Assembly (NCBI RefSeq): GCF_000150275.1 | Contig: NW_002060944.1 | Coordinates: 9,014,159-9,078,158 of the forward strand | DNA: 64,000 bases | Reading direction: 5' to 3' | From: Trichoplax adhaerens | Taxonomy: Eukaryota; Animalia; Placozoa | Part shown: one piece after another, positions 14,821 to 60,222 of the stretch | Position numbering within the stretch: position 1 is the first letter of the stretch | Layout of the letters: the number at the start of each line of letters is the position of its first letter | Position numbers and translations under genes: made by a program | The notes under the pieces: generated by a model | Database searches by the model: none | What the model was told of the DNA's origin: nothing | The model's input: the letters and a program-made list of their open reading frames with translations, nothing else

Positions 14821-14908
14821 AAACTAAACTTGCAATGATGAGCTCATCTTAAACATCGTATATTGCTAATATTAGACACCCTTTAGTTGTTACTGCTCGA
14901 TATGGCAG

Positions 14909-21859: not shown

Positions 21860-24800
21860 ATGATTAAGCCAAAACTAGCAAGTGATGTTGAAAATAAATT
21901 TCAGCATAAAGTTGTTAGTAGTAGTAGTAGCAAAGTTATGGAATTAGAAACTATACCTGAGAAAGAGGATCGAAATTTCTTATCAAGCCCTCCAATTAAG
22001 TTAAAATTTTTTTCTAAGTTTAACAAAACTTATCCATCAACGTTAACGAGAATTACGACTAAAAATTTCGTCGATCCTGACTTGATCCCTCTTTACCAGG
22101 TTAGCCAAAATATACTGTCTATGATATCAGAATTTGTAAGCAAACAAAGTTACGCATCAAATGAGTCATTTTCATAGACTACCTATACGAGTAGTCATTA
22201 GAGACTGATAGTTATATATCTTACACTTGATATGGTAACTCCTCTAAACAATTATGAACTAATTTGCACTGAGATTTACAAATAATTTACAATTCATTTT
22301 CTGTATTTAAAATATGTTGGTAGTAATACGATAGCGAGCCACATAGCTTATTGCCTTTCTAAAACGCCTTTTGATGGATTTTTCGATGCTTTTCCTATCA
22401 ATTAAGTATTTTATTCTACAGGATATTATTTATTCTATTACTTCAGCGACTGCAAGTATGATATTGATTTCTTTAAAAACTTATACTAATTATATGGTTA
22501 AATTCCTTTTGATTGGGAAATTACGAAATAGAATTTTATCGTAACACTTCAGCTCCCCAGCTACTATATTAAATTTTCAAGCCTAATAATGAACTCGACC
22601 TTGTTACATTCAAATATTTTAATTAACAAGCAATTATGAAGTATAAGAATTAGTATGAGCTTAAGCTTGAGATAAAATTAAAGATATTAAATCAACTCTA
22701 CTGAAAGAAAGAGTCTCTTGTATATCTTATATCGATTCAGTCTTCGTTTTTCCCAATTAATCAACTAGTTTATTCTATAGGATATTGTTTCATTAATTCA
22801 ATGGCTACAATCATGATATCAGTTTCTTTAGGAGCATATACTAGTTATATGTATAACTTTCTTTTGATTAGGAAATCACAAAATATAATCTTACCTATTC
22901 AGTCCTTTAGCTGCTATATTAAATTTCCAAGCTTGACAATAAACTCCAACTTGTTACTTTCAAACATTTTAATTACCTAGTAATTGCAGAATATTATAGC
23001 TTATATGAGCTTTAGCATAAGATAATGAAGTAAAGATAACAGATGAACATTACTTAAACAGCAATCTCTTGCACAGAAGAATAGTTTTTGAAAAATATGT
23101 TTCATAGACGAACGTTCTACATACACACACTAGAACGACACGAGAAACGAAATAGCTCTCTCAGTTTTCAATCTGTTAGCAATTAAGTCAATATTTCGTA
23201 TAATCTTTGACTTTCTAATATTTAATATACCAGTGTTACAGTGTTATAGACAGTAATATCCAGATTATAGTGGAAATATATATACATACAGCATACTAAA
23301 AGTAGTAGTTAAATTTACAGAATCGAGAATAATCTTCTTACGTTATAAATCGCTATAATTTTAACGAACTTATGGTAGATTGTAGATTATCATGGAAATG
23401 TTCCGTAACAGGACATATCGTAATCTGACTATTTCGCAGTAGTCATTAGATATCTATATTTGTAAATATTGTTGTTTTCGTTAGGTAGCTGTAGATAAAA
23501 TTAGCTTTTGATTCATTAGAAGGTTTCAATGTTAAATTAATATTACCAACTAGGATGTCTAATTATTGTAAAAGAGCATAAAAATGCTGTATATCATATA
23601 ATAAAGAGAGTTCTTAAATTAGTGTCTAACGTAAAATACGAGGCGTCTAAGTCTTTGTGCAATCTACTAGTATAGGAAAAGTGGTCCTGATAGGGTAGAC
23701 ATTTCTCCCTGATATGAGGTTCAGGGAATCGCCTTATTGATCGAACATTACGATATCTTGTTACAGAGCTGTTTGTTAACAACCAGTAACTGATTACAAT
23801 TATTTGAAATAATTACAATGATCACCTCTATCAAGTAAGGGATCTTATTGGAAAAGAGAATAACTAGAAATAATTGACTTGAAAGATTTACAAAGTACCA
23901 AATGTTCATTACTTTCATAAGTCACTGCCTCTAATGTAACAACAATCATTAAGTAAGCCATTTTTCATCAATCATAAAGGTTTAGTTTATGGAAAAAAGG
24001 GAATAGAATACGAAAATATAAGGCAGAATGATTTGCGGCCTATACGATATCATCAAATTTGACTCTATAAATCAATTCTTATCATTCTAATACTAAACCT
24101 CAAAGGCCTGATAAAACTGAAGATAGTAGAGATTATCTCAGTAGTTAATTACTTTTATAGAGATTAATAGAATTTTTTTATATTTTCTTTCATAATAACG
24201 AAATATTAATTTAAAATGTTTAACAACGCTGCTATTCATATAATGTTATCAGGCCTGTAAAACCGGAAATTCAGCAGAATTAGAAGATATTATTGGAAAA
24301 AAATACGAGCATAGACGTAAGACGTTCAAACTCGTTAATACTTTGGATGAACAACTTTTAACTCCTTTACATCATGCCACCGTCAATCAAAATCTTGATA
24401 TCATGGCTTTTCTCCTCTCTAAAGGCGCTAGTAAATATAAATTAACTTTAAATAATTTTTAGTACTAGCATTTCAGTATTGTTAACTGTAATTTTAAAAA
24501 TCCCATACGAATTTTTTATACTTTAGATATTAATGCTGTAGGCGGTAAGCTAAATAGAACTGCTCTGCTAATGGCAGTCAATTCTAATCAGTATGAAGCT
24601 GTCCGCCATCTACTGGATGAAAACGCAGATATTTTCGCTAAGGACAGTAACTATCAGCATGTCCTGCATCTTGCCGCTCAACAAGGCAATATTCCTATAA
24701 CTCGAGTATGTAGCTAGCTAAAAAAATATCTATAGGTATAACTAAGCAGTGTTACATAATTCAATTCTGCACTACCATAAATATTGTATTCAAATGGTAT

Positions 24801-27800
24801 TGAACTATATTGACTAATAATCGTAAAGTACCAGTACTAACGATAAGTTGACTTACTAGTTGATTTTCTGAAATTACTTTATAGCTTATCCTTGGTCACC
24901 TAAAGCAATTTGATCTATCCTTATTAAATACCTGTGATAACGAAGAAATGGTTCCGCTGCATTATGCAGCAGATCATTGCCATTTAGAAATTTGTCAGCT
25001 GTTGGTAAGATCTAAGTAATAATGGTTAAGATGATATCGTAATAGATTAAAATCTAAAGTTTTCAGAAGTTTTATTAAGCGTTTTTAACCTAACACTGCT
25101 TTCAAATGTAAGATTCAGCATGGAAGTGAAATATCACTTCAGGCCAAGGATGGCAGTACACCTTTACATTTAGCCGCTTATCGTAAACAAATCCATATTT
25201 CAAAGTTCTTATTATCCGTCGGTAATTATTACTCGACTAATCAATCGTGCATCATTTAATACCTTCAAACCATCAATTGACAGCTATATTTCTCTCTGCT
25301 TTATTCCTTTAGCAACTAAGCATAAAAATAATCATTTTGTGGATATTCGCGATAACGATGGTAAAACTGCTCTCTATATCGCTATTGAAATGAATCATTA
25401 CGAGGTTATAACGCATTGCTAGTATTAATACATTATTAAACAACATATTTTAACTTATTAACATTTTCTGTGGAGTAAAATATTCAATAAATCAAACGTA
25501 AATGAATGGAATATGTTTCTTTATAGATGATAAAATTATGTCTGGATCATGGAGCTAGTCCAATACAAATACAAGATATGGAAAATTTGATGTTTCAGCA
25601 GGTGAACAAATCTTTATTATTCTCATGAAATTATTCATATTAGCATTCCTAATAAACGTATACCAGCTGTTGTTTTTTGGATTAACAATAAGCATTTTAC
25701 TTTTATATTTTATATATCTAGGGCAAAACAAAGCCAATGCTACACCTTGCTGCTAATAATGGAAATATTGATATAGCCAAGTTACTTCTGAATCATGGCG
25801 CAAAAATAGATAGTCTAGACGAGGATAATTATACAGCAATGCATTATGCAGCCTTAGGAAACCATGCAGACATGATTACTTTCTTACATGAACAGGTAAT
25901 AAAGTAAACACTCTACTGTACAAATAAAATAAAGCAAATATTCCAGGGAAAGATTGAACTTTTGCTATTTTCATTTTCATTACTTATAACTCAATAGATA
26001 GCAATTTAACTATCAAAATACAGATGAAGCAATATTCACTTATAAAAATTAATTACTTAAACTGTAAGAAACTACTCTTGACTTGTTTGTTGCCCATAAA
26101 TATTTATTGATATAGAATGCGCAATGCGTATTTGTGTATGGGTTAGCTCAGAAAGTCATCCAATCATCTTTATAAATTTTACCTTTATTCCTGATTGCAT
26201 GTTTGAAAGTATTCAGGAATAGTATCTCATTTCTAATTTATTCCATTCTTCTACCGGCATATGGTACAGTAAAGTCAATCATCCATAAATATTGCCATTT
26301 GAAACACGAATCGACCCTCATATTCGTTATATAACACAATATAGCTAGAATTTAGCTGTAGGGACGCTTCCAAATTTCTTTTAAATTTGGTATTAATATA
26401 TGAAGATTTAATTATTTGCGGTATATTTGGTAGGAATGAGAATACGAATATTCCTTCACATATCTAGTATGAAAATATTCGCGATCTCAAGCTAGAAAAA
26501 GACCGAAATAATTATATTACAATTCAGCAAGTTAAATTCTAATGCAATAATCTATAATACATTATACAGGGTCTATTTTTGGATCATATCTGCAATAAAG
26601 GGACGACTCCGTTACTTTTATCCATCCAGAAGGGATACATTGAAGTATCTTGCAAACTATTAAATTTAGGTGCTAATATATCAGTGGTTGATACAGAAAA
26701 GAGGACATGCTTGCATTTCGCAATTTATTCTCCGGATACAAATATTTTGCAGATGCTGCTCAAGGTCAGTATTATTCCCTATGAGCTAGCTCTTAGCTTA
26801 CTAATTTATTTTAAAAGACAAAAAATCATTTAACCAAAGACAAATTTCTTTTCATCATATTCTAGAATGGTGCTGCATCTCTTATTAATAATCAAGATAG
26901 TAAAGGCTATACTCCTTTTCTTGCATCAGTTCGTAATAGAGATTCAAAAGTTAGTCATATTCTAGGTGGAATCTTTCGGGCTAATCGAAATAATTTTATA
27001 GTGATATTGAATCCAAATTCTCTTTGATTCGTAATTATCAATTATCGTAGGTTATGAATCTACTACTTGATCATGGCGCAAATGCAGCCACGCTGAATAA
27101 AAATGGCGATAATTTTTTGCATCTCTCTGCTATCCATGATTGTCATCATCTAATCAAACAGTCAATAAAATTTGTTAAAACTACTATTAATGTTAAAAAT
27201 AATGATGGAAAAACTCCATTACATATCGCTGCACGCCTAGGTTACAGTAAAACAGTCGAAGTTCTTCTAAGGTGTGGTGCTTACGTCAATACTTGGTGAG
27301 TATATCAAGAAAAATGCATCGTTTAAAATTTGTCAATAGATGTCAATATTTAAACTCTTTATAAATAAATTTTTCCTAAGTACAAATTGCTGCTTTTCAA
27401 TTTTACAGTCATATCATATAGTAAGCTATAATTATGTTACCCATTTAATTCTAGTGACATTATGGGGAATACTCCATTGCATGATGCAGCAGAAGCCAAT
27501 CAAATGGCCGTCGTCGAAACATTGATAGACCAGAAAGCAGCAGTTAATTACACGAATCGGAAATTGGTAAGTTTGCACACGACATAAAATTTATTCGTAA
27601 TTCTTAATTACTTAAATTAAATATTTCATAAAAGTGAAATTACACCTAGTGACTCTCAATTCATTACTCACAGAAGACTATAAATTAATTAGAACTAAGC
27701 AGAAAGTTTTAAAACGAGATCAGCGTCAGATACTGAGAGCAACTAATTTCAAAATAGTGGCTAAAAATAACTTAAGATTTGTAATTTATCTCATACTAGT

Positions 27801-30800
27801 TAGATTGATAACAGCCTCATGCATGTACTGTATATAGAATATATTTAAATGATGTTAAAATAGCTACTAGATAAAATAATATTTGCTCGTTTTGTCTAGA
27901 TATTTTTTAAGAACTCAGTGATTCCCTAATAACTAAGTTTCCTGATAAACTCTTTAATTAAATTCAACCAAATATAAACTTATAAGTCTTAAAACTTCAA
28001 TCAATCGCATTTTATTATTTAAATTTCTCCAGCTTTACAGAAAGTATTGTTATCTAGAACTTACTAAAAAGGCTTTGTATTTGCAATTTAAAATAACATT
28101 TAAAATTTTTAATTATATTTTAAGTATTTACAAATCAATTACCTATTGACTTATTAGGAAACACCTCTACACTTGGCTTGTAAGCAAAATGCTCTTAACG
28201 CCGTCAAAATCTTGATAGCAAATCATGCAGATATTTCTATCACAAATACAGCTGGGCATACCTGCTTTAATATTGCTATTGAAAACAGTAACACAGAGGT
28301 GGCACTTGAAATGATAAACAGTGATAAGTAATTAATCTATCCTCCAAATTACTGCTAGAACATTATTATTTACACAATATCTCCTGCAACTAAAATATTC
28401 TGATCAAGTTTCTGCTATAACTTTGTTAACTGCACTAATTGACACATATAGTTGGAAGGCAGTTATGGAGCATCGAGGCGCTGATGGTTATACACCTATG
28501 AAACGTTTAATTGAAAAGATACCTGAAGCAGCACAAGTAAGATTGAATATCAAATACTAAATAGAGTATATACTATATCTCTGTTCATTCAATAGCCCAA
28601 AAATGATCAGATATAATTGTATACTGTATCTTTAGAATCAAAATCCTAACTATTTTTATAAGCTTTTACATCAAATACTTTTCAGGCGGTATTGGATCGA
28701 TGCATAGTGCAGTCTAATCATTCCGAAACTCATCCTGATGCTTTTGTATGAATTTATGTATTTGTAAATGTATATATTAATTTTATGTATTGTTTTTCCA
28801 TTTGATTTATAAAAACATATATTATAGCGAAGTTAATCAATGCAACTAATTTTAGTAAAGCCATTTATGACACTCAAGGATCTGATGATTTTACCAATAT
28901 AGTACTGAAGTACATATAATTTATGTAATCATTTAGATCACATTCAATTATGAATATATTGAGTCTTCTCCAGAAAAAACTGAATTAAAAGAAGTTCAAG
29001 ACAACTATTTAGCAATTTCGGTAAAAAGCCAAATGTTTTAAAATTGCAATAGTTAAAACCCGATAATATGAAACATAAAATCATAAATTTAGATTATTCT
29101 ATCTAGTTTTCTTATATCTATGATAAATGCAAATGATTACTTATAACTTGATACAGTCGCAAATACCTTAGCTTCGAAATTTTAGTTTGTTAAAAATAAT
29201 CAATGAGTTAGCGTCTATAATATTCGCTAACCCAATTTATTTTGTAAGCATTTAAATGCAAAGATATTAATATTAAAGATATATGTATGTAGTTCTTTAT
29301 TCTAGATTATTAATCATTATAGCTGAAAAAGTAACAGTAGTAAATTAGTAAAGCATTAAATAGCAAATGATAGTTTTATGCATTTATAGATATTCAAGGC
29401 AGTTATTCTGTACCTTCTGTATAAATACCATACTCGTCCGAAAATTGCTTTATTTAGCTCACAATTTCTATGATAAATTTACAGACTATCCTGTGGCTTT
29501 TAAATATAGCGTTTAGGAACGTATAAAGATCAGTAATATTTAGTATTGGCAATCAAGAGTTATCGGCCCTTAATTAGAAAGGTTAAAGAAACAACTATAA
29601 AATCATAATTCATTCACTGCATTGCACATCAATGTAGTTAGACCAAATAGTATATTTACTTGCCTTTTCCTTAATTTCATGAAATCAAACCATTTAATTT
29701 TATAATTATTATGTATGTCAGCAAGGAAACAGATCTTATCAACATTAATAACTATTATTTTTCCTCAATAGAGTATGGTCGAATATAACCGAGATTCCCT
29801 GCTGTGTCATCCACTCATTATGGCATACAGAATGGATAAATGGTAAAAAAGTTGCCTTTTAATACAACAAAATTTCAATTGAATATTTCTACTGAAACTA
29901 TTAATTTCATTTATAAACCTCTTACAGGAAAAATGGTATAGGTGCCACTTTCTACTTTCAAATACTCTTATATATCATTTTAATATCCGCATATGTAGTA
30001 ACTATGGGAATTGACCTACTTTGCAATTCACCCAATGCAACAAACAACTCCTATCTGGTATTTGTTTACATCAAAAATAAAGATTATTTTATACATTAAT
30101 GAGGATCTCTATTGATCACGTCCTTTCTTCCTATACAGAATCGCACATATATAAAAAAATTTATCTATTACAGATCTTTCGGAATAAAAATCAATAGCCC
30201 AATATAAGTTGCATTTATCTTTTCGTAGGATTGCAAAACGGTTCCTCCAGGAGTGGTCGAAGCTGCACCAATATTAGTCCTAACGTTTGGAGCAATTGTA
30301 TTCACAACTCATAGTATCCACTTCTATTTAAGAGTAAGCAGTATAACATATTATTTACTCCACGATCATGATAAAATTTAGTTAATAATTTTTAGAGACC
30401 TGTATTAAAACAGAAAAAAAGAAAGTTATTTCAGTCGTTCAAATAAGAAATACATTTCAAAGTAATAAATTTTATGGCTTATAACTTTATTAAGCCTAAT
30501 AAATATCTTGGAGCAATTCTCCAGTTTACTATATGTCTACGAGATACTAAGACTTAGAGATAAAAAGTTCAGGGATAAATTATATTAATTTTACAGTTCA
30601 AATTAAAATTGCATGAATATTTAGAAATATAAATATCTTTTATTATATTCTGATAGCATTTTAAATAGATTACAGATAATATTTTAACTTTTATGTCTAA
30701 GACTTGTTACATTTAAACCTCGTAGCCAATGGAGGCCCTGAAAAGTTCTTCTGTCAACATTGCTGAAACTATGATTGGGTTTTGTTCAGTTATATTTGGT

Positions 30801-33225
30801 ATTTTATCGTTAGTCTTTGGTAGTAATATAATCAACTCACAGGCTGGTGCTTTACTTATATTTGCGTCATTAATGGTCATAATAGTTCAATTACAGAGGT
30901 AAATTTTAATTCCCTCTCATTTTTTGTTATAATTTCAAATAATGCAATCTGCATCCATGAAATGGCTATATCTTACTTTCAATGCCTTTATAACTAGAAC
31001 ATCACTTCTTGGTAATTATATTCTCATGTTTTTAACCGTCTTGAAGACGGTGTGTAAAGTCATGGTATTAGTTTTTATGATTCTCATCATATTTGGAGTA
31101 TCTTTCCAGTTTGCGTTTAATGCTGCTGAAGTAAGTATACTATATAAATTATTAGATATTACTTAAATGACAAAATTTTAATTCTGATGATATAAAGAAT
31201 AATAATGCTAATGCGTAAGCCACAATCAATCGATCAATAGGTTACTCCATTCAACGAACTGATTAGATCAGCTCTAAGTATCATAGTTATGTTCCTTGGA
31301 GAAATTAATTTCTTTGAGATATTTGAACCAAAACTTCGTGGACTACCAGCTGCTCATCTAATAGCTATAGGACTTTTACTAATTGCCTTTATTGTACTCC
31401 TGAATGTTACTCTTACCAACTTATTGGTAAGTTCGCTTCTATTTTACTTCTACATTGGACAAAAAATTTTCTGTCCTCTCTAAGTAAATCTTATAGCGTT
31501 CAATATTGTATTATAGCGCCTGAATTACGTAGTTTAACAAGTCATGAACTTTTTTATTTATTCCAGTCGCTTATGCTCAAAAAGGAATTAAATTTTGTGC
31601 AAGCTTTCAATTTAGTTTCTGACTGCATTTGAATAGTATCAAACAAGTAGGATTATGATGAAATTAAATTAGAAGCCCAAGTATAAATCTTCGGATCTTA
31701 ATTTGTTCGTGACAAACATTGCTGTTGCATTTGAGTCAACAGCACAGCAAAATATAACCGAATGAGCTATAATTCCCGTATTATCATTTACTATAATCTT
31801 GAATAAGTAATACATAAATTAATTTTAACTAATGAAACTTAATTTAAAACACAACCATAAATTTTCTTATCTTAATCTAGTTTTGACAGGCATCACAAGT
31901 ACATTTGCGTCAATAGCTTAGAATTTTATGTAAATTTCAAGCTAATCGTTACTTTATACTGTACTGTGACTGAGCTAGTGAAAAAGAGCAGGTGATAAGA
32001 TTGAACTAATAACGGCAAAATTGAGCCGAATTAGACAACAATCCCGTAAGATCATTGGCTGTAATTTCTAATAAAAACACATAAATTAATTTGTAGCAAA
32101 ACCAGAGTAAAGATTATTTTTCTTCCACTACCACTACAATAACTATTTTCAACTTAGAAACTACTTTACGACAGTGATCAACTAATCTAATACCACGTAT
32201 TAAAATAATATATCCTTCATGCTACTAAAATTGCTTCTATACAACATATTAAATTAACTATTTTGAACTATTCCTTTAAAAAAAATTAGAGTCACAGAAT
32301 TAAATTAAACAATCTTTTCTCTTTCTTTAAAAACAATAATTTTAACATCCCAGAATGAAATTGCACGGTCTTGGCTCTTTCTTAAAAAAAATAATTCAAA
32401 ATTACAGAGTGAGAATACTTATCATTTGCTCTTTAATTTCTTTTAGACTGCTCTAGCTGTTGGCGATATCAACGAATTGCAGCAGACTGCTAAAACAAAT
32501 GGTATTATCCATGCGTTGGTGCTAATTGATGAGGTGAATAAACATTCTCTAACATTCTTAAGAAAAAAACTCTACAAGCCGCTTAGTGTTTATCGGATTC
32601 AAGGACCGAAGGGTAAATTTAGAAATGTAAGCAGCGTAATATTTTTATTCAGACATATATCAATAAGTTTATATAGCCTATTGAGTTTCCTGATACATTC
32701 AATCCAAGGTACTGTACACACTGTAATACTCATAGTCATATTGTTACAAATGAAACTGTGTCAAGAGATATTCCTTCGATATTCTCCTAATTGATCCTAG
32801 CATAACTACCCGGATATTGTGCTTAAATTGTCAAATATTATTGTCTTATGCTAATTCTTTACAATTATTCTCGATAGTACTTATGGAGCAGCATGTCAGA
32901 AAGTGCAGCTCTTGTGAAATGTACTCAGGACAGATTTTCAACGATTCGAAATAAAAATCGTCCATTAAGCAAATTGCAATCAAATGATGAAGGAATTGCC
33001 TGCAACGATGTGTATGTAGACTGAACATAAATGAAATTCTTTCGGCATTAATTTATGTTCATTTTATCTAACTATGATTGATCTACATATTACCTTACAT
33101 ATATTAACATTAATATGAGATAAATTTTTAAAATTAGGCATGCGAAGCTGAACGAATCTATTTCTGAGCTAAAGCAGATGATAGATAACTTAAAGGCTAA
33201 GTTTGATGCTTTAGCAAGACCTTGA
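21860..33225 (+). CDS. TRPA1: TRPA1-like ankyrin-repeat cation channel, paralogue A (25 exons, about 1130 aa)
   Basis: Exon 1 21860-22099, exon 2 24253-24430, pore/S6 exon 31241-31426, TRP-like helix exon 32447-32626, last exon 33138-33225 (TGA). About 16-17 ankyrin repeats (TPLHHA, TPLHLAAY, TPLHIAA, TPLHDAA, TPLHLAC). Linker WKAV...LIEKIPE..AVLDRC...FNYEYI; pre-S1 MVEYNRDSLLCHPL...KW; six hydrophobic segments; filter MFLGEINF; S6 TNLL-TALAVGDINELQQTA; C-terminal coiled coil ISELKQMIDNL. This matches TRPA1 architecture; the symbol means TRPA1-like and orthology was not tested. Confidence 0.92.
22395..23071. repeat. Old tandem duplication, about 350 bp unit, intron 1 of TRPA-A
   Basis: Colinear blocks TTTTATTCTA(C/T)AGGATATT, CTTTTGATT.GGAAAT, GCT.CTATATTAAATTT.CAAGC, CTTGTTAC.TTCAAA.ATTTTAATTA, TATGAGCTT and TCTCTTG each occur twice. 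Confidence 0.75.
23234..23781 (+). mobile_element. Solo-LTR-like element, family A copy 3 (diverged, in intron 1 of TRPA-A)
   Basis: TGTTACAGTGTTATA...GTTAACA termini, TSD ACCAG (23229-23233, 23782-23786). Shares blocks such as GGACATATCGTAATCTGACTATT and CTTATTGATCG with copies 1 and 2. Confidence 0.8.
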
Positions 33226-33652
33226 ATGATTCTAACCAAGAAAATTTTAAAGCAACTACATTCATTGAAGCATGTACCGTACTTAGTGCATCTTATTTCT
33301 CGCAAAAAATTGTAAATATTTAGATAAATACATTGATGATATGAAATAATATATGCTTGTAAATCAATAAGTACATGACTCTACAAATTGGCGAGGACAA
33401 ATGATGACTTTAATGTAGAAAATCAAATACATGCTAAGCTATTAATCCATTTCAATGATTTATTCATGTTTAAATTAAAATATATGAGCGAACATAAATG
33501 TACCAAACGCAAATTTTTTAATATTTTCATATTCCAGATCAATAATTTCATTATATGCCTCTTATTGATCCAGAAAGATGAGGCAAGTGCTCTTGATTCA
33601 AATTCCGTATTTTATCTTAATAAATTAGTGTTTTTGTTACGACAAAACCACT

Positions 33653-50700: not shown

Positions 50701-53700
50701 ATTTATATCTTAATAGTTTGTCTGACACTTTGATAAATTTTTATAAAATCAATTGCTTAATTTTAAAACTAATTCCAAATTTTTCAATAGCAAATAAGCG
50801 AGGAAAATCATCACTAATTAACTGCCAGGATAAAGATGGTAAAACAATATTGCAAATTGCAGTAGAAATGAACAACTATGAGGTATTTTTAATGCAAATG
50901 TGACTGTTGTTCTTTACTATCACAGCTAAATATAAGTGCTTTACTTAGTTTATAAAATATTGATCCAACTAAAGACCTAAAAATATTTATAAATTAGTAT
51001 ATGAAATCATTCTACAAAATTATAGATTGCTAAATTGTGCCTGAGCTATAACGCCGATCCAAACTTTCGCAATAGTGATGATTTCCAAACTTCCGATTTG
51101 GTATTAAATCGTTCTGATTTCTAAGTTAATCAAGTCCCCTACTTTCATCAACAAGTGCATCCCTATCTAATCAATCTTTACAAATTCAATATCAATTGCA
51201 TAGAATACAGTAAGATCAGTCCTACATGTAGCCGCCATTAATGGGCAAATTGACTTGGTAGAACTACTTCTGCAGCATAAAATGCCCATAGACACCGTTG
51301 ATAGCACAGGAAGAACAGCAATGCATGGAGCTGTTATAGGCAAGAATGTCGAAATGATTGACTTTCTTCATGCAAAGGTATTTATAAGATAGTGTAAAAG
51401 AACTCTATTGATGCCATTATTCAGCAACCATCTTTTGCAATCTCTCAATAATTAGTGTAATTTACCAATAAATTGTATTGCTTCAGATGAGTTTATAGTG
51501 TTGAGGGAATTCATTAATTTTACAGGACAATAAGTATGGTTTAATAGTGTCATCGAAGTGCATTGAATTAGAATTTATTTTAACTTTAACGTAGATACGA
51601 GTTGTTCTCCATAGCACATTAAAAGGTATGACATTATTGATTTAGTAGAGCGCCTACTGAGGCCACTGAAAGCAATATATACAAGCGAATGCTAGTACAT
51701 ATTACAAATAATTAATTAAACAATCTTTGCTAATCTGTTTAGTTACTCTATTCATTAAAGAGCTTATTTTTACTTAACTGATTTATCTTATTTGTTCTTA
51801 AAAAATCAATCGTCATTATTAGGGTCTTTACCTAGATTCGATATGCCAGCATGGTCTTACTCCATTGCTAACTGCAGTTAAGAAAGGATTCGCTGACATA
51901 ACTAATAAACTATTAGAGCTTGGAGCAAATATTAAAGTTCTAGATAAGAATCAACAAACTTGTCTACACTATGCTATTCAGCATGAGGATTCTTCTATAT
52001 TACAACTCTTACTAAAGGTGGGTAATTCTTCGCTCCATTAAAATGGATAATCCTGCATAAATAGGCAGCACTAGATTCTAACCACCCTTCAACATCTACA
52101 TACTACGTACTCGTATATTTCATTTTAGAATGGTGCTAAGCAATTAATCAATTGTCACGATGATGAAGGAAATACCCCATTATTGACATCTGTTCACAGC
52201 AAGAATAGCAGGGTAGGCAAATTACCTTCTTTTACGATAGAATTCCAGCAGTATCAGCTATTACTATTCAGAATTTTCATTCGGAATAGCAATCTTAGAG
52301 CGATATAGCTTACTTGCAGTACAACAGTTCTTGATCAACGTCTTACCTTCTTGAAAATAGGCAATTGAAATCCTATTAAATAATGGGGCTAATTTAGCGA
52401 TTGTTAACAATAATGGCGATGGATATCTGCACATCGCTGCTGCTAGAAATTTCCATAATCTCATCAAAACCTACTGTAATATTGGTAGCATTAACGTTAA
52501 CGTTAAAAACAAAATTGCCAAAACGCCGCTCCATATTACTGCTGGTCTTGGCCATTTGAAAACCCTGCAGACTTTGCTTGATCTTGGAGCAGATGTTAAT
52601 AACTGGTTAGTCTTCTTCTATCTAAATTAATTAATGAGAATAGTATTAGATGTCCATCAGAATCGGTAGCACATATTTAAAATCGTCTTCTTTCCGATAT
52701 ATCCAAATGCAGAAATTGAATAAAAATGATATAAAGCAGCTAATTTTGAACAACTATTATTTTAGTGATATTTTAGGAAATACCCCTCTGCATGAAGCCG
52801 CCAAAGCTAACCAAACCGAAATCGTTAAAATTTTGCTAAAGCAAGGCAGCTATGTCAATACAACCAATAGAAAAAGGGTATGTTAACTGCAATAGACTTT
52901 CCATTAGCTTTACTTAGGTAATCACTTTCTTATTCAATTCAATCTTATTGAACAGGAAACGCCTATTCATTTAGCTTGTGCTGAAAATGCAATCCAAGTA
53001 GTCCAGATTTTATTAGCAGCAAATGCTGATATATCTATCAAAAATTTAAGAAGCCAAACTTGCTTTAATACAGCAGTGGAAAATAATTGCAAAGAAGTAG
53101 CATTCCTATTGATCGAAGACAAGAGGTAAAAATTTTTTTAAAGTTACTGCTAATAGGCTCCACTGTAATAAATCGAAAACTATACCCTAATAAAATATAC
53201 TAGCAAAACCCATGGAAATCTCACAGATTATATTATAATTTTAAGTTAATAGAATAATCTCATTATTATGATTTGATAATTGAGTTGATTCTAATGACAG
53301 TGGACAGTTCCAATTTTTAACGATTTACGCATCGATTCGCGTATATCTAGAATTATTTCCACCACACTCGATTTTACTAGGGTAGCTTCAATTTCGATTT
53401 TCGCTATGCTTGATATAAGAAACACTATAAAAATGATATTTTTCTTAACTAACCTCAAACTCTTCAATGCATTGAACAAATATTCATTCAAAGTGAACCC
53501 ATAACTAAACGTAATATTTCAGATGGCAAACAGTGATGGATTGCCGCGGTGAAGATGGATATACACCCATGAAACAGCTAATAGAAAAGATGCCCGTAGT
53601 TGCTGAGGTAATGGAAGCAGGATAAATCTAAACACAGCAATTACAATTACTCGAATTCAGATATAGTTATGGTATATCGGTGGTCTAGGATAGCCAATAG

Positions 53701-56700
53701 AAATCGAATTCAACCTCTCTTTTCAAGTATAATTTCTAAGGATGCAAACAGTTTCACTAAAATATAGTCATAATTGGTCTTAAATGTTAGCATTTGGACT
53801 ATTAAGTAATGCATGGATCTAATATATACTCTATAATTCTCCCAGTTTGCACGTTCAACCTACTTGACATAAATTCTATTTTTACATCCTTTCCGTCTAG
53901 TACAACAGTTTCGTTCTACTATTAAAAATTAATCTATCTTGAATGTTAATATTTTACTTTTAGTTTACGTCAAGATAAAATTTATTTTTATAATTTTTAT
54001 ATAGCACAACAGTCTCCTTCTACTATTAAAGATCAATCGGTCCTGAATATTAACATTTAGACTAATAAATAATGCACACATGCATTATATAGTCTACAAT
54101 TTTTCAAGTTACCTCTAATTTACTTGACACCAAATCTATTTTACAATCTGTGGCCTAGTACAACAGCTTCATCCTGCTATTGCACTAACTCTTAATCGAA
54201 GCGGTAACAATATTTGGAATCTACTTATACGTATCATTTTTTAACTAGGCTGTTCTGGATCGATGTGTAATTTTATCAAATCATCCAAGAAATCATCCAG
54301 ATTCCTTTGTAAGCTAACCTACCTACTGTAAATAGGTTTATACTAATATCTAATAATTTTCTTTTAGCCATTGAGATAACTGTTATGATACGAGGCTCCA
54401 ATTATTATGCATCTTGATTAAAGCAAAAAATAAAATTGGCATGGAAATTGATATGTTGTATTATTTTTTAATCTACTCCAGGTTACTTTTAATTATAAAT
54501 ACATTGAATCGCCACCCCAAGAGACACAATTGCGAGAAGTTAAAGATTGCTACTTGTCCATTTCGGTAGGTTAATATAACCTATTCGTCAAATTTAATTT
54601 AGTATTCAAGAGATCGGCCACAGCATCACCTAATTTTAATTGATTATTGGATCAATAAATAAATGATGTCCAGCCTTAAATGATATTTTGACTAAGCAAA
54701 CAACAAAATATCACTGTAAAGTTTAAGCCAATAGAGTAATGCTAATTGCATCCATTTTTTATACTCTTTAGAGTATGGTTGAATATAATCGTGAAAAATT
54801 ATTTACTCATCCCTTAATCATGGCTTATCAGCGACATAAATGGTTCGTTACAATTAAACTGCATTTTAAATTACTGACACTATCCAGCAGACTATATAAT
54901 ATACCTAATCATCATATATAGCCATCGCTAGTTTACTTGAATAGTTTTATTTCCTCTAATGGTCAAGATACCGTAGCTACTTTATTAAATCTATGCCTAT
55001 TCAGCAAATAATCTACCATTTATCTATAGTCTATTTCCCAGTATTGATTCAGGCAGAAATACTAAAATCATCTTGCTATTCTTAATCAAAGGAACAGCGG
55101 GCTAGGATTACGATTTTATATGGAATTAGTTAGCTACTTTATCATCGTTTCATTGTTTTCTATCGTTATGGGACTTGATCTAATCTGCAATACAAATAAT
55201 AACGCAACTTATGTCAATAATTCATACTTGGTAAGAAATTAGAGAGAATAGTAATTATATTACCGAGTATTATATAACTTATATAGAGATAATGTCAAAA
55301 CTATCTAGAGACAATATTCTCGTGACCAACCATTGCATTTGTGCTATTTAATTTAATCGCATCAGAGTTTCCAAATTAAAATGTTCAAAATTTTAAAATA
55401 CTTCATCTTTTTGTTGATAGGATTGCAGAACTGTCCCGCAATCTGTAATCAGCAGCTCACCAGTGGTTATTGTAGTTCTTGGTTCCTTAGTTTTCATTGG
55501 TCATTTAATTGCTTTTTTGGCTCGTGTAAGCTATAAAATTCATCCTGATTTATATCTGCGAAAAGAATAGTATCTCTACTAAAGATTAATTTTTCAGCCG
55601 TTTCACTGTAGCTGTACTTCTATCTTCAATGAACATTTTTTTATCAAATTAAGTTTCTCCGTTACTACTTTAAAATTGTTATAGCCATACGAACGTATTA
55701 AAAATTTCTCCATCAACTTTATGGAAATGTTCATTGGGCTATTCTCCGTTGTTTTTGGCATACTAGCTATGGTTTACGGAAGCAATGTCATTAATTCGCA
55801 GCTAGGCGCTGTGCTAGTTTTTTTGGCATTAATGGTTATTGTCGTTAGTTTGCAGAGGTAGACAGTCCTATGAGTTGTAAATGCTAAAATTAAATATGTA
55901 TAGCACTTGTAACATGTATTTGAAGACTAAAGTGAAATATATGTTGATATTACCTATTGACGATTACATTCTGCGTTCTAGAGCCGATTTTTTAGGTCAA
56001 TATATTGTCATGTTCATAGCGGTGCTGAAAACTGTGCTCAAGGTCATGATTTTGGTCATGATTATTTTAATAATATTCGGTATTTCCTTCCAACTTGCCT
56101 TCAACGCAACAAATGTTAGTCATATCCATAACTTCTAAGCAAATTTCTGTATTATTTATAATTTACATGATTGCAATACAACATAAATTAAGTCGATAAA
56201 CGTAGACAGATATTGAGTTTAATTCCGGTATGCGAGCTATCTCTAGGATAGTATTTGATACTGATCATATGGATAGCATAAGTTAAACCTAGGTAATTCT
56301 ATATGCTTTTGGGAACCTTTTCAAATGTGATCTTAATATAAGTTTTACTAGTTTCTAGCCAAATTTATAAACTTTATCCGTTGTCATTACTCTAGCTAGT
56401 ATTGCTCTAATAATTAATGTCGTGATCGCCTCATATCAGGCAATCCTATCTATACCGTAGTCTGTTTTTGTTATAATAAGCAACGTGAATGCAATCCACG
56501 TGCTTTAAAAATTTTCCTTATCAAGAGTTTACAATCAGAATGGGCTAAAGCATAAAATTTTACATAGCTATGGCCGTTTATTTAATATAGTGTGTAATTA
56601 CAGTATGTGTCTGCATTAACATCACGGTATACTATGTCATTGACATAATTGCAATTCCATTCATTCTTACTAATAACATAGCATAACCTAGATCTTTGAA

Positions 56701-58075
56701 GTTTAAAACAATTTATATTATCAATCTACAAGATTGCTCCATTTAATGAAATTGTCACGGATTTCCTTGGCCTATTTGTCATGTTTACTGGAGAAATTAG
56801 TTTTTACGAAATATTCGCTCCAAAACTGCGTGGTTTACCAGCTGCACACCTGTTAGCACTAAGCTTTCTCCTGATAGCTTTTGTAGTCCTTCTAAATGTC
56901 ACATTGGTAAATTTATTGGTTAGTAAAGTCCTGCTTGCAATATTGAATTGGCACGATTTATATCAGCATATGTAGCAACTTGCGAATCGATTTATAATCT
57001 AAACTTTGCAAGACTAATTTCAGTAACACGTTAAGTACTGCCAGTAAAAAATCAATAATCTTAGAGTGCACCTATTATCCATTAAATTATATAGCCTTTA
57101 TCAAATTTGCTATCTATATGTCTATAAATAAGCAAGAAGCTTCTGCAAATGTTACTAATGCTAGCATTTAATACAAATCAGCGTGCTATTCCGTCTAATA
57201 ACGTTAAAATTCTACTTGTAAAAATTTTACTATACTAAAATATATCCGTTGTCTATTAATTGCATAGCCTTTATTCGAATTTACCATTCTCACCACTATG
57301 ACTTAAGCAAAAAGCTTCTTTGAATGTTACTGATAGTAGCTTTGTAACTTAAATTAGCATGCTATTACATGCTTTGCTATGCAGGATTTATTGATAACCG
57401 ATGACTAAAATATAATTTCGCTTCTTTCACCCTATAGATTGGCTTAGCTGTCGGTGATATTCACGAACTACAAATGCGAGCTAATTGCTCCCGCATCATT
57501 AATCAACTTGTCATGATTTATGAAAAGAATAATGATGAGATCGATTATTTCAGAAAATCTCTCTACAAACCGATGTCAGTTTATCAAGTTCGTGGGCCAA
57601 AAGGAAAGTTACGAAATGTGGGTTATTCTAATATGCATCAAATACTTCAAATTATCATGCAAATTCTATTTTAATCTAGCTGACAAGGTCTTACACTATT
57701 TTTTATATAGTTTATTTGGAGAAACATATCAGGCAGAGCGTTGATTATAAAGCGCGTATTTGATCGAATTAAAGAAAAAGAAAGTAGCAAAGAAATGTCC
57801 TATGACTGCTCAGGAGATCATGACTATGACATGCATGACGCCTATTATGAGTAAGTTGTAGCATATCTACAAGCTAAAGCTAATTATAACAAATTTTAAC
57901 TATACAAGAATTCATTCCAAATTAAACAGAAATTACATATTATTCACGTATGGACTTATTTTCATCAAATTTTAATTATTATTCTTACCTTAGACACAAG
58001 CAATTAAAGGAATCGATTACTGAATTAAAAAAGATGGTGCAATCCATTGCTGCTAAAGTTAATGCCGAAAATTAA
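47702..58075 (+). CDS. TRPA1: TRPA1-like ankyrin-repeat cation channel, paralogue C (25 exons)
   Basis: Exon 1 47702-47950 (MIQP...NKINSEMLRVYK), exon 2 from 49688, pore exon 56733-56918 (MFTGEISF...NVTLVNLL), exon from 57438 with the canonical TRPA1 motif IGLAVGDI, last exon ends TAA 58075. Exon structure matches A and B at the junctions checked. Confidence 0.92.
48800..49240 (-). mobile_element. Solo-LTR-like element, family B, in intron 1 of TRPA-C
   Basis: Minus strand TGTCACGGTACGAACTACCGTGA...GAAGCTGGTTTATGACA, imperfect TSD CTGTT/CTCTT, homologous to 16076-16650. Confidence 0.75.
53830..54190. repeat. Diverged tandem repeats (2-3 partial units), TRPA-C intron
   Basis: TAG(T/C)ACAACAG...TCTACTATTAAA occurs at about 53898, 54002 and 54156; TACTTGACA..AAATCTATTTT occurs twice. 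Confidence 0.6.
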
Positions 58076-60043
58076 AGAAAATACCTAGTACCTTATCTAA
58101 AGTTTTAAAATTTGTAAATACTCAAAGAAGCATTAAAAAATTTCCATATTTTTAACGATTACCAGGAATTAGCAAAAAAATGAAGTTGCAGTTATCTTTA
58201 GCACCGTGACAACATCATATTCGAAATAACTCTAAGCTAATGAAAGATACCGCCATATTGCGTATTATAATCTATATCTAAAAACTGGAATCAAAGCAGC
58301 TAGGGCAATAACGTGTTTGAATTATAAAATAAGCAAACACTGATGTTTGCTACTTTAGTAATTTAAGGTTATCAACTTTCACAGGCCTGTGAAATATTAT
58401 ATTCAATATTCTATATTACAAAGTTCCGGTTTAATATACAGTAAAAGGAATATTTTATTAATCATTGAGCAAAAGTTACGTATAAATTAATCAAAGATTT
58501 CAATCATAGCATCTACTTCTAGAATAGCTCTGAATATATATTCCAGTATAGAGAATGATACTACGCTACAAGCTCTACATATCTATCGAATAAAAATTTT
58601 AAACACGGCCACTAAAAAATAAATATTTTTGGGTGTTCAGATTTCCAAAATTAAATTATCCATGAATACTATACCTTCGATAGTTTATTTCCCACCTCTT
58701 GGCTATCACCTACTAATCTTTAATTACAATCCATAGAGACATCTACATATGATACGTTAGAATTTAGTCATTAATTGGTTATCATTTGATTTTTGCACCC
58801 ACTTAAAAACAATTTATTAAGGTAATATATATATATAGTAGATGATGCAAACAAAGTATGACCATGATTGCACTACATGCGTAGGGAGCCTTAACTAGAC
58901 TTTGATTTGATAGTTAGTAGTCTATATCAACATGTATACTTTGTTGGAAGAGGATACAATGAAGTAGTAGATTACTTGAGTACTTATTTAACACTAATTT
59001 GATTTACGGAGTCTTACATCAACGTATTTGTTATACTATAAATAAATTATTCGGCTGCATGGACTGTTTATTACGTTTTCTTTCCTTTCTATTACATATT
59101 TTTATATCTATAAGCCCGCTAGTAATAGTTTCGTATTCTCGTAGCGATCATTAAACTAAATGAGGTTTGCTTAAACCAATATTTAATCATTTTAAATGGT
59201 TATCCGAAAGTAAATATCTGTTTGGTGACAGGTTATAGGTGATACCAATCATTCAAAGTTCATCTAAATATACAGCTACGATGCCACTTTGAACCATTCA
59301 TAAATTATGGATTCTAGGCAAAGGTAAACGATATTTTCTCCTTACCCCATACAGTAGAGTGTACATTGGTAGGAAACAACGACTCGTGTTCATATTTATT
59401 TATACAACAATAATTCGAACTTTCTTACACACCTAAATGTATCTAAAGTAATAAAACAATAAGAAATTAATATTCAAGAATGATTGGTCTCAGATGAATT
59501 GTGGTCGGATGGGTGCTTGCAAAGAAAACTTTCATCTTAAAGTGTATTAAGATTGTAATTGCCTGTTGTTTATACTAGCAATCAGATAGACTGCTATGAT
59601 CTAGGTTATATTTATTGCTACAATCTTTATCTCTACATGTATTCTATCTCTAATAAATTAATTTAGTTGTAATAGTGACAGCGTTAATTATTTTATTTTA
59701 CTTTACGATAGCTAACACGCTGCTCTACTGGAACTTTTTAGCACTTATAGTCTATAATAAAGAATCTATTTTCTTACTCAATGCACTGGTGCAAATCTCT
59801 AAGTAGCTGCTCAATTTACTTCCGCTGAATCATCAAACCATCCATCATACATCCATCCAATGATATACTTATGTACATGTGTTGATCCTCTTACCTTAAT
59901 GAGTGCACGGGTTTACTTATCGTAAGCTGTTCCAACATTATTTGCCGGCCATTTTACCATCCAATATGATTCGATATCCCTCACTAAATCACCAAGATTC
60001 TCAAAAATTATACGCTATCAGACGAGATAGAAATAAAGTTTTG

Positions 60044-60222
60044 ATAATCCAACCCAATCAACAACCGGACAAAATGATAGATGATAGCCAAGATGATGAT
60101 GAGAATGATGAATTTACCGTTCAATATTCAATGCAGCCACAGTTGAATAAACCAAAAAAGTCAAACGTAATAAGTGCTTCGATTAAAACAGCATAGATTC
60201 AACAGTCCTACTAATCTATCAG
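60044..60222 (+). pseudogene. Disrupted first exon of a probable fourth TRPA paralogue
   Basis: Begins ATA-ATC-CAA-CCC (IIQP; compare MIQP and MIKP in the paralogues). Ends ...NSIDSTVLLIYQ followed by gtaag, matching the exon-1 ends NFVDPDLIPLYQ|gt and NKINSEMLRVYK|gt. The two halves are one frame apart at the A-run 60185-60188. It lies about 2 kb after paralogue C, similar to the A-B and B-C spacing. Confidence 0.55.

What the first reader, a model, noticed from the sequence alone, without database searches (positions are those of the whole stretch)
21860..60222. Tandem array of 3 (+1 damaged) divergent TRPA1-like channels: a possible lineage-specific sensory receptor repertoire
Seen: three full-length 25-exon TRPA genes head-to-tail with about 1.8 kb gaps, matching exon structure, clearly diverged introns and proteins, plus a fourth start. 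Known: TRPA1 channels are tetrameric chemo- and thermosensors and are single-copy in mammals. Inference: an old local expansion whose copies differ at gate, filter and ion-binding residues suggests functional specialisation or heteromeric assembly, possibly in an animal without neurons if the source is placozoan.
Basis: partly seen in the sequence, partly recalled or inferred. Interest (0 to 1): 0.8.

Follow-up and report, generated by a model that had tools for sequence, protein, structure and literature searches.

The report
Tandem TRPA channel genes in Trichoplax
The window holds three intact neighbouring genes for TRPA-type sensory ion channels in the nerveless animal Trichoplax adhaerens. 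They belong to a row of five, within a family of about fifty such genes. They are real and conserved, but their role is untested and the supposed damaged fourth copy does not exist.

Summary
Observation mostly confirmed. Three head-to-tail plus-strand genes lie at 21860-33225 (A), 34974-45886 (B) and 47702-58075 (C). Each has 25 GT-AG exons, the same intron phases, near-identical exon lengths and no internal stop. They encode 1133, 1138 and 1142 aa and sit 1748 and 1815 bp apart.

The "fourth, damaged start" (59903-60196) shows no similarity to exon 1. The real fourth gene (D) starts 879 bp past the window end and a fifth (E) follows; both are intact.

The genome is Trichoplax adhaerens. Gene C is the fragmentary model TRIADDRAFT_53924, and its Trichoplax sp. 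H2 orthologue, named TRPA1 in GenBank, equals my 25-exon model exactly.

Human TRPA1 is the best solved-structure match (E=3e-91, ankyrins through the TRP-like helix). The electrophile-sensing cysteines C621 and C665 are absent, so these are TRPA-family genes, not TRPA1 orthologues.

The copies are old: synonymous sites are saturated, and C and D have orthologues in a divergent placozoan. They are under purifying selection. They differ at pore positions 913 (L/L/T) and 957 (T/T/I).

Expression, ligands and heteromer formation were not testable here. This scan already reported another TRPA array on other DNA of this genome (s1-756259). I count 53 TRPA-type pore exons genome-wide.

The parts
21860..33225 (+). 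Gene A: 25-exon TRPA-family channel gene, 1133 aa (ATG to stop)
   Evidence: Model; exon table. No internal stop; all introns GT-AG. 99% orthologue RDD41572.1, named 'TRPA1', in Trichoplax sp. H2. Ankyrin Pfam hits on exons 2-13.
34974..45886 (+). Gene B: 25-exon TRPA-family channel gene, 1138 aa; closest paralogue of A (62% aa identity)
   Evidence: The ORF is also intact in Trichoplax sp. H2 (4 aa differences), although the gene lists returned for the two H2 loci show no model there.
47702..58075 (+). Gene C: 25-exon TRPA-family channel gene, 1142 aa. The reference model TRIADDRAFT_53924 (XP_002109669.1, 425 aa) covers only its 3' part and skips exon 21.
   Evidence: My model mapped to H2 DNA equals RDD41571.1 exactly. 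Human TRPA1 match E=3e-91.
24253..28327 (+). Gene A exons 2-13: ankyrin-repeat domain, about 580 aa or roughly 16-17 repeats. Same layout in B (37150-40978) and C (49688-53125).
   Evidence: Pfam Ank families on single exons. The C orthologue has 8 Ank_2 stretches. It aligns to the human TRPA1 ankyrin domain.
28452..29842 (+). Gene A exons 14-17: pre-S1 linker (coupling domain), the most conserved part at 60-75% aa identity. It holds the equivalents of human C621 (Thr), C641 (Cys), C665 (Ser) and K710 (Lys). B: 41146-42621. C: 53523-54842.
   Evidence: Alignment of P0003 to human TRPA1; residue table; per-domain identity.
29928..31426 (+). Gene A exons 18-22: S1-S6 transmembrane domain. B: 42699-44200. 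C: 55092-56918.
   Evidence: Hydrophobic segments. Ion_trans Pfam hit on the C orthologue at 862-1022. Alignment to human TRPA1.
31241..31426 (+). Gene A exon 22: pore helix, selectivity filter (MFLGEINF) and S6. B: 44015-44200 (MFLGEIDF). C: 56733-56918 (MFTGEISF).
   Evidence: A profile of the five exons hits only TRPA1 in the PDB, at residues 897-956. G914 is kept, D915 is Glu in all copies, and L913 is L/L/T/V/S.
32447..32626 (+). Gene A exon 23: lower gate (TALAVGD, with Thr at human I957) and TRP-like helix. B: 44873-45052 (Thr). C: 57438-57617 (IGLAVGD, Ile).
33138..33225 (+). Gene A exon 25: C-terminal heptad-like helix, placed where human TRPA1 has its coiled coil. B: 45793-45886. C: 57994-58075.
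   Evidence: Sequences. The coiled-coil character is inferred from the sequence pattern only.
33226..34973 (.). A-B spacer, 1748 bp
45887..47701 (.). B-C spacer, 1815 bp
59903..60196 (+). It is not related to the TRPA genes.
   Evidence: No tblastn hit below E=6. The exon-1 HMM gives no hit even at E<=100. No Pfam family. No gene listed here in the H2 locus.
23333..23812 (.). Diverged copy of a roughly 555-bp interspersed repeat inside intron 1 of gene A
   Evidence: The family has at least 40 copies at about 94% identity in the genome.

Best explanation
The region holds the first three genes (A, B, C) of a five-gene, head-to-tail array of intact TRPA-family cation-channel genes in Trichoplax adhaerens. 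D and E lie just beyond the window.

Shown by the analysis:
- Each gene encodes the full TRPA architecture. This is a short N-terminal exon, about 16-17 ankyrin repeats, the TRPA1-type pre-S1 linker, six transmembrane helices with a pore loop (filter x-G-E), a TRP-like helix and a short C-terminal helix.
- The array arose by old tandem duplications within the placozoan lineage, and the copies have been kept by purifying selection.
- The five genes form a placozoan-only subfamily, one of several arrays that together hold about fifty TRPA-type genes.

Inferred, not shown:
- The proteins form tetrameric, non-selective, Ca2+-permeable cation channels that transduce physical or chemical stimuli in placozoan cells.
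- They lack two of the three cysteines that make bilaterian TRPA1 an electrophile sensor, so they probably do not sense electrophiles by that mechanism.
- The differences at pore positions 913 and 957, and in the N- and C-terminal tails, are the likeliest basis for different conductance, gating or assembly among the copies.
For: Gene structure and intactness:
-.
- Independent confirmation of model C by RDD41571.1.

Family assignment:
- The C orthologue (P0013) matches human TRPA1 at E=3e-91, aligning 343-1060 with 276-1009. Drosophila TRPA1 scores 1e-70. NOMPC matches only the ankyrin part.
- The linker-plus-TM fragment P0003 hits TRPA1 entries only.
- The pore-exon profile hits TRPA1 only.
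- For the same fragment, human TRPA1 scores 70 bits against 34-44 bits for arthropod pyrexia-like proteins.

Selection:
- A-B: dN 0.25, dS about 1.8.
- All other pairs: pN 0.33-0.36 against a saturated pS of 0.74-0.80.
- Between T. adhaerens and Trichoplax sp. H2, exons change less than introns in A, B and C, and pN/pS is 0.25, 0.37 and 0.04.

Age and lineage specificity:
- Metagenome contigs L011/L012 and L013 carry a D orthologue and a C orthologue of a divergent placozoan. In the tree, (C,L013) has support 89/91, (D,L011) 89/92, (A,B) 97/99 and the placozoan clade 99/98.
- Among 1.84 billion representative proteins, only placozoan sequences score 76-107 bits; the next best scores 45 bits.
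- In the own genome the five copies score 110-114 bits and everything else 32 bits or less.

Key residues are tabulated.
Against: - No transcript evidence could be obtained for any copy. The word searches returned only annotated proteins.
- The gene lists returned for the two Trichoplax sp. H2 loci show no model for B.
- In H2, gene A carries a 1-bp deletion in exon 11. At least in that strain one copy may be decaying, or the assembly may be wrong at an AAAA run.
- Channel function, tetramer formation, ion selectivity and any sensory role are inferred from homology only.
- Placement inside the TRPA family (TRPA1-like versus basal TRPA) was not resolved, because no broad set of named TRPA sequences could be retrieved.
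- The H1-H2 substitution counts are small (7-21 per gene).
Confidence: 0.82

Rival explanations
1. One or two of the three copies, most likely B or A, are unexpressed or decaying duplicates rather than working genes. The array would then be partly a gene graveyard.
For: The gene lists for the Trichoplax sp. H2 loci show no model over B. The H2 orthologue of A has a 1-bp deletion in exon 11, and its GenBank model skips about 35 residues to get past it. The H1-H2 pN/pS of A (0.25) and B (0.37) is higher than that of C (0.04).
Against: In T. adhaerens all three ORFs are intact across 25 exons with canonical splice sites. B is also intact in H2. With pS saturated, an unconstrained copy would not keep 3.4 kb open. 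A-B dN/dS is about 0.14. Exons evolve more slowly than introns in A and B. The H2 deletion lies in a 4-A run and may be an assembly error.
Confidence: 0.12
2. The genes are true TRPA1 orthologues, as the GenBank name for the H2 proteins says, and work as electrophile and irritant sensors like bilaterian TRPA1.
For: Human TRPA1 is the best solved-structure match along almost the whole protein. C641, K710, N805, E808, G914 and V961 are conserved. The GenBank name is given.
Against: The equivalents of C621 (T/L/T/R/T) and C665 (Ser in all) are not cysteines. There are five paralogues here and about fifty TRPA-type pore exons in the genome, so there is no one-to-one orthology. Another array on contig C1410 has a filter (MMVGDISYRETF) much closer to the human MMLGDINYRESF. 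The GenBank name is automatic.
Confidence: 0.06
3. The proteins are channels with a housekeeping or intracellular role, such as organellar cation release or osmotic or mechanical homeostasis. They would not be receptors of an environmental 'repertoire'.
For: Nothing here shows where or when they are expressed. The aligned Ca2+-site residues and the pore are conserved among copies, which fits a shared basic function.
Against: Housekeeping genes are rarely kept as five old diverged tandem copies inside a family of about fifty. The tails and pore-lining positions differ between copies. All studied TRPA channels are stimulus-gated sensors (reviewed in PMC11526382).
Confidence: 0.1

Closest known systems
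Human TRPA1 (PDB 6PQQ, 6V9V, 3J9P and others)
   Same: Same overall architecture, alignable from the ankyrin domain through the pre-S1 linker, S1-S6, pore and TRP-like helix (E=3e-91). C641, K710, N805, E808, G914 and V961 are conserved. Length is similar (1133-1142 versus 1119 aa).
   Different: C621 and C665, the main electrophile sites, are replaced. The filter Asp915 is Glu. Position 913 varies (L/L/T/V/S). I957 is Thr in A and B. The S2-S3 linker is about 6 residues shorter. TRPA1 is a single gene in mammals; here it is one array within a family of about fifty.
Trichoplax sp. H2 proteins RDD41571.1 and RDD41572.1, named 'TRPA1' (GCA_003344405.1, contig NOWV01000072.1)
   Same: Orthologues of C and A. 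The DNA is colinear at 99.4% identity. RDD41571.1 equals my model of C when that model is transferred to H2 DNA.
   Different: RDD41572.1 lacks part of exon 11, where there is a 1-bp deletion in H2, and it uses another start for exon 9. The H2 gene lists show no model for B.
Other TRPA-type arrays of T. adhaerens, for example contig C1410 at 6.68-6.85 Mb (13 copies), contig C1413 at 0.56-0.65, 5.36-5.41 and 5.63-5.69 Mb, and the earlier scan finding s1-756259
   Same: Tandem, same-strand rows of genes with TRPA-type pore exons. All pore exons are open.
   Different: Only 22-31% identical to A in the pore exon. The A-E profile scores them 32 bits or less, against 110-114 bits within the array. 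The C1410 copies carry a G-D filter like human TRPA1, whereas A-E carry G-E.
Arthropod basal TRPA channels (pyrexia-like, e.g. Orchesella cincta ODM88205.1)
   Same: Best non-placozoan hits of the pore-exon profile. They share an 'M-x-T/S-G-E-I/F-x-F' filter and 'NLL-x-G/S-L-A/V-V' in S6.
   Different: Far more distant (45 bits versus 76-107 bits). For the TM fragment they score below human TRPA1 (34-44 versus 70 bits).
TRPA expansions in molluscs, e.g. eight TRPA1-like genes in abalone (PMC12980990)
   Same: Lineage-specific multiplication of TRPA genes in a marine invertebrate.
   Different: The placozoan family is larger (about fifty pore exons) and occurs in an animal without neurons or sensory organs.

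Membership tests
TRPA subfamily of TRP channels | Long N-terminal ankyrin-repeat domain (about 14-18 repeats) | tested here: met
   Pfam Ank families on exons 2-13. 8 Ank_2 stretches in the C orthologue. About 580 aa, aligned to the human TRPA1 ankyrin domain.
TRPA subfamily of TRP channels | Six-TM channel domain with a pore loop between S5 and S6 | tested here: met
   Ion_trans hit at 862-1022 of the C orthologue (25.6 bits against a cutoff of 25). Hydrophobic segments. Pore helix, filter and S6 align to human TRPA1 897-956.
TRPA subfamily of TRP channels | Closer to TRPA1 than to any other TRP subfamily outside the ankyrin repeats | tested here: met
   The linker-plus-TM fragment P0003 hits only TRPA1 entries (human, Drosophila) in the PDB at E<=1e-3; there are no TRPV, TRPC, TRPM or NOMPC hits. 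The same holds for the pore-exon profile. A full phylogeny with named TRP subfamilies was not made.
TRPA subfamily of TRP channels | TRPA1-type pre-S1 linker (coupling domain) and TRP-like helix after S6 | tested here: met
   Exons 14-17 align to human 621-711 and exon 23 to 957-984 ('LAVGDI..Q'). The linker is the most conserved part of the proteins.
TRPA subfamily of TRP channels | C-terminal tetramerising coiled coil | tested here: inconclusive
   The last exon encodes a heptad-like helix in all copies. No coiled-coil prediction or structure model was made.
TRPA1 sensu stricto (electrophile-sensing orthologue group) | Reactive cysteines equivalent to human C621, C641 and C665, plus K710 | tested here: not met
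   C621 is T/L/T/R/T and C665 is Ser in all five copies. Only C641 and K710 are kept.
TRPA1 sensu stricto (electrophile-sensing orthologue group) | Placement in the TRPA1 clade of a TRPA phylogeny | not tested
   No set of named TRPA1, TRPA1-like and basal TRPA sequences could be retrieved. The word searches returned only the Trichoplax proteins.
Processed or decayed pseudogene | Frameshifts, stops, or loss of introns or splice sites | tested here: not met
   A, B and C each have 25 exons, GT-AG at every intron and no internal stop. dN/dS is well below 1.
Tandemly expanded sensory-receptor repertoire (functional sense) | Many diverged, selectively maintained paralogues in arrays | tested here: met
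   Five genes in this array at 44-62% aa identity. 53 open TRPA-type pore exons in the genome, mostly in arrays.
Tandemly expanded sensory-receptor repertoire (functional sense) | Cell-type-specific expression and distinct stimulus tuning | not testable with these tools
   No transcript or functional data were reachable.

The most novel reading that the evidence does not exclude
Placozoans, which have no neurons, use a family of about fifty tandemly arrayed TRPA channels as their main environmental receptor repertoire, much as other animals use GPCR or ionotropic chemoreceptor families. In this reading the A-E subfamily (Glu filter, Thr or Ile at the lower gate, no electrophile cysteines) is a placozoan-specific sensor class. 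Its members would be tuned to different stimuli, or would assemble into heteromers.
Probability: 0.2. Interest if true: 0.8.

Novelty: new member of a known kind. Interest (0 to 1): 0.5.

Why it matters
Trichoplax shows thermotaxis and chemotaxis without neurons, and the sensors are unknown. The one paper that discusses candidate sensors lists TRPM, TRPML, TRPP and TRPV homologues in this species, and no TRPA (PMC10498350).

Correct full-length models of five intact TRPA genes are given here, where the reference annotation has only a 425-aa 'uncharacterized protein' for gene C. The genome-wide count is about fifty TRPA-type pore exons. Together these provide concrete candidates to test by expression mapping and electrophysiology.

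The natural variation among copies at pore position 913 and gate position 957 is a ready-made set of variants for structure-function work on TRPA channels.

The finding is not a new kind of system. It is a real, well-preserved and poorly annotated branch of a known family.

Tried and rejected
1. 'Fourth damaged copy' at 59903-60196. Rejected: no similarity by tblastn or by an exon-1 HMM and no Pfam family.

2. Single-exon searches. phmmer of the stop-to-stop exon-23 segment against the PDB gave nothing. A five-sequence exon profile and the database proteins P0003 and P0013 were needed.

That was too few named outgroups for a TRPA phylogeny.

4. Word searches with P0001 (TM region) and P0003 returned only the Trichoplax proteins themselves. 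They gave no transcript-derived fragments and no outgroups. The third allowed search was not spent on a B exon, because the chance of success was low and the cost high.

5. Paper searches for the gene and protein identifiers found nothing. The orthogroup table of Najle et al. (OG_16) lists many placozoan genes together with fly TrpA1, painless, pyrexia and water witch. It is a broad ankyrin/TRPA group, and I could not map it to these genes.

6. A regex count of ankyrin repeats was unreliable. The repeat number is an estimate from domain length and Pfam hits.

7. Pairwise dS could not be estimated for most pairs because of saturation. I report pN against pS instead.

8. Joined spliced proteins were not sent to any search, fold or family tool. 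External searches used single exons by reference, or database proteins. The joined models were used only in local scripts.

Full report
**What is in the sequence.** The window is AT-rich (about 30% GC) and has only short ORFs, as expected for intron-rich eukaryotic DNA. An all-against-all comparison of stop-to-stop segments showed three colinear series of similar segments on the + strand, 45-77% identical at the protein level. Pfam placed ankyrin repeats on the upstream segments and a weak Ion_trans hit on a downstream one.

**The array extends past the window.** I fetched the flanks from the same contig. The window is G000:C1413:9014159-9078158. The series continues beyond the window end with two more copies. 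A sixth, more distant TRPA-like gene lies on the minus strand 2-8.5 kb before the window start.

**Gene models.** Using paralogue-supported cores, GT/AG sites and frame consistency, I built models for all five plus-strand genes (table).

| Gene | Window coordinates | Length |
|---|---|---|
| A | 21860-33225 | 1133 aa |
| B | 34974-45886 | 1138 aa |
| C | 47702-58075 | 1142 aa |
| D | 64879-74921 | 1150 aa |
| E | 79132-89261 | 1150 aa |

- All five have 25 exons, no internal stop and the same 24 intron phases.
- Exon lengths are nearly identical between copies.
- Splice sites are canonical, apart from one GC donor in D.
- Spacers are 1748, 1815, 6803 and 4210 bp.

The joined proteins were used only inside local scripts. 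Those tools received single exons by reference, or database proteins.

**External validation and species.**
- The search of 1.84 billion representative proteins with a profile of the five pore exons (A1) returned 12 hits.
- P0003 is XP_002109669.1, 'uncharacterized protein TRIADDRAFT_53924 [Trichoplax adhaerens]'. It sits on a contig of 9,739,543 bp, the length of the window's contig. It is identical to the 3' part of my gene C except that it skips exon 21.
[quoted passage not shown] H2]'.
- The H2 contig is colinear with the window at 99.4% identity.
- My model of C, transferred exon by exon to H2 DNA, gives exactly RDD41571.1.
- Model A agrees with RDD41572.1 at 22 of 24 junctions. The two disagreements trace to the H2 model: a 1-bp deletion in exon 11 of H2 that the model splices around, and a different acceptor for exon 9 that breaks an ankyrin repeat conserved in all five paralogues.

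**The 'fourth start'.** The ORF 59903-60196 is unrelated to the first exons. tblastn of all five proteins against the whole C-D spacer gave only chance hits. An HMM of the five first exons, run without filters at E<=100 over 138 kb, found only the five real first exons. The ORF has no Pfam family, and the gene list for the H2 locus shows no gene there. The real fourth gene starts 879 bp beyond the window end and is intact.

**Family assignment.**
- The C orthologue matches human TRPA1 with E=3e-91. It aligns 343-1060 with 276-1009, that is, from the ankyrin domain to the TRP-like helix.
- Drosophila TRPA1 follows at 1e-70. NOMPC and the ankyrins match only the repeats.
- The linker-plus-TM fragment P0003 hits only TRPA1 entries, as does the pore profile.
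- For the same fragment, arthropod pyrexia-like proteins score 34-44 bits against 70 bits for human TRPA1.

These are therefore TRPA-family genes.

**Key residues.** I read positions against human numbering from the alignments and transferred them to all copies.

| Human residue | A / B / C / D / E |
|---|---|
| C621 | T / L / T / R / T |
| C665 | Ser in all |
| C641, K710 | kept in all |
| N805, E808 (S3 half of the Ca2+ site) | kept in all |
| G914 | kept in all |
| D915 | Glu in all |
| L913 | L / L / T / V / S |
| I957 | T / T / I / I / I |
| V961 | kept in all |

The S2 half of the Ca2+ site cannot be aligned with confidence, because the S2-S3 linker is about six residues shorter. A and B carry H-x-x-H there, and C only the first His. 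That was the subject of another note (s1-778820). The genes fail the cysteine test for TRPA1 in the strict sense.

**Age and selection.**
- Protein identity is 62% for A-B and 44-50% for the other pairs.
- The linker is the most conserved part (60-75%). Exon 1 and the C-terminal tail are the least conserved (20-53%).
- Synonymous differences are saturated (pS 0.68-0.80) while pN is 0.21-0.36. For A-B, dN/dS is about 0.14.
- Between T. adhaerens and Trichoplax sp. H2, exons differ less than introns in all three genes:

| Gene | Exon difference | Intron difference | pN/pS |
|---|---|---|---|
| A | 0.62% | 1.22% | 0.25 |
| B | 0.20% | 0.77% | 0.37 |
| C | 0.23% | 0.35% | 0.04 |

The substitution counts behind these figures are small.

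- Two short hits of the big search come from metagenome contigs. L011/L012 carry a gene that is 59-81% identical to D exon by exon and much less to the others. L013 carries one that is 67-79% identical to C.
- A tree of exons 20-23 groups (D,L011), (C,L013) and (A,B), with all placozoan sequences apart from the arthropod outgroups. E and the minus-strand gene are unresolved at the base, and the outgroup branches are long.
- The C/D and (A,B)/C splits therefore predate the divergence of that placozoan lineage from Trichoplax.

**Context in the genome.**
- The A-E pore profile scores the five copies at 110-114 bits and all other loci at 32 bits or less.
- After adding those distant loci to the profile (A2), 53 open pore exons were found at E<=0.01. 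Most lie in same-strand arrays on contigs C1410 and C1413.
- This partly tests, and somewhat exceeds, the 'about 40' of the earlier scan note s1-756259, which described another array 3.6 Mb upstream. The weakest hits were not checked individually, and two may be allelic scaffolds.
- The C1410 copies have the filter MMVGDISYRETF, much nearer to the human MMLGDINYRESF than the MF-x-GEI of A-E.

**Literature.**
- The thermotaxis paper states that TRPM1-4, TRPML, TRPP1-2 and TRPV1-2 homologues had been identified in T. adhaerens. It does not list TRPA (PMC10498350).
- A 2024 review says TRPA predates animals and describes TRPA1, TRPA1-like and arthropod groups without mentioning placozoan TRPA (PMC11526382).
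- The orthogroup table of Najle et al. 2023 puts many Tadh, TrH2, Hhon and HoiH23 genes in one broad group with fly TrpA1, pain, pyx and wtrw.
- No paper holds the identifiers of these genes.

The genes thus exist in public annotation under an automatic 'TRPA1' name in H2 and as a fragment in the reference. I found no description of this array or subfamily.

**Mechanism.**
- Shown: intact genes with the full TRPA architecture, old tandem duplicates, purifying selection, and differences at two pore-lining positions and in the tails.
- Inferred from the family: tetrameric, non-selective, Ca2+-permeable channels gated by physical or chemical stimuli.
- Because C621 and C665 are missing, electrophile sensing by the bilaterian mechanism is unlikely.
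- Thr at the lower-gate position in A and B, and Leu, Thr, Val or Ser next to the filter glycine, could change gating or conductance. This is speculation until tested.
- Heteromer formation cannot be judged from sequence.

**Verdict.** This is a real, well-preserved and under-annotated TRPA array, of which the window shows three of five genes. The damaged fourth copy is not there. It is a new member of a known kind, of moderate interest mainly as part of a large TRPA expansion in a nerveless animal, which this scan had already met on other DNA.

Noticed in passing
window 2560-3110 and 14984-15540; diverged copy at 23333-23812: A roughly 555-bp interspersed repeat with no coding signal. At least 40 copies at about 94-95% identity were scored, out of 654 first-look candidates in the genome. 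It is probably a non-autonomous transposable element, and one old copy sits in intron 1 of gene A.
   Followed up: partly
window about 11860-15862 (+), by transfer from L010:1-4003: The upstream neighbour of the array is a STAT transcription-factor gene. The H2 model is 708 aa with STAT_int, STAT_bind and STAT_linker domains.
   Followed up: no
window 27177 (gene A exon 11); L010 about 15320: In Trichoplax sp. H2 the orthologue of gene A has a 1-bp deletion in an AAAA run plus five substitutions in exon 11. The GenBank model RDD41572.1 splices around it and loses about 35 residues of ankyrin repeat. This is either a real frameshift in H2 or an assembly error.
   Followed up: partly
window 34974-45886 (gene B); L010 and L009: The gene lists returned for the Trichoplax sp. 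H2 loci show no gene model over the orthologue of B, although its 25-exon ORF is intact there with 4 aa differences.
   Followed up: partly
window 53600-58075 (3' part of gene C): The T. adhaerens reference protein TRIADDRAFT_53924 (XP_002109669.1, 425 aa, 'uncharacterized') is a fragment of gene C. It lacks the first 700 residues, the end of exon 20 and all of exon 21.
   Followed up: yes
G000:C1413:9005688-9012171 (-), i.e. 2-8.5 kb before the window start (L007): A sixth, more divergent TRPA-like gene on the opposite strand. It has ankyrin, linker, S5 and TRP-like exons at 27-52% aa identity to A-E. No full model was built.
   Followed up: partly
G000:C1410:6683932-6854816 (+); L016, L018-L020, L022-L024: A tandem array of 13 TRPA-type pore exons spaced about 12-19 kb apart. 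Its selectivity-filter motif MMVGDISYRETF is much closer to the human TRPA1 MMLGDINYRESF than that of A-E. These are better candidates for TRPA1-proper relatives.
   Followed up: partly
whole genome G000: 53 open TRPA-type pore exons at E<=0.01 with a broadened profile. Most lie in same-strand arrays on contig C1413 (0.56-0.65, 1.46-1.50, 5.36-5.41, 5.63-5.69, 6.91-6.95 and 9.0-9.1 Mb) and on contig C1410. The weakest hits were not checked one by one.
   Followed up: partly
L011, L012 (ENA ERZ23499115, ERZ27263980) and L013 (ERZ27263980): Metagenome assemblies contain 30%-GC contigs carrying orthologues of genes D and C, about 75% identical in exon DNA to Trichoplax. A divergent placozoan was therefore present in those samples.
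   Followed up: partly
L001:7131 (gene D, first intron, window coordinate 65131): The best-placed donor of intron 1 of gene D is GC rather than GT. The same GC is present in Trichoplax sp. H2.
   Followed up: no
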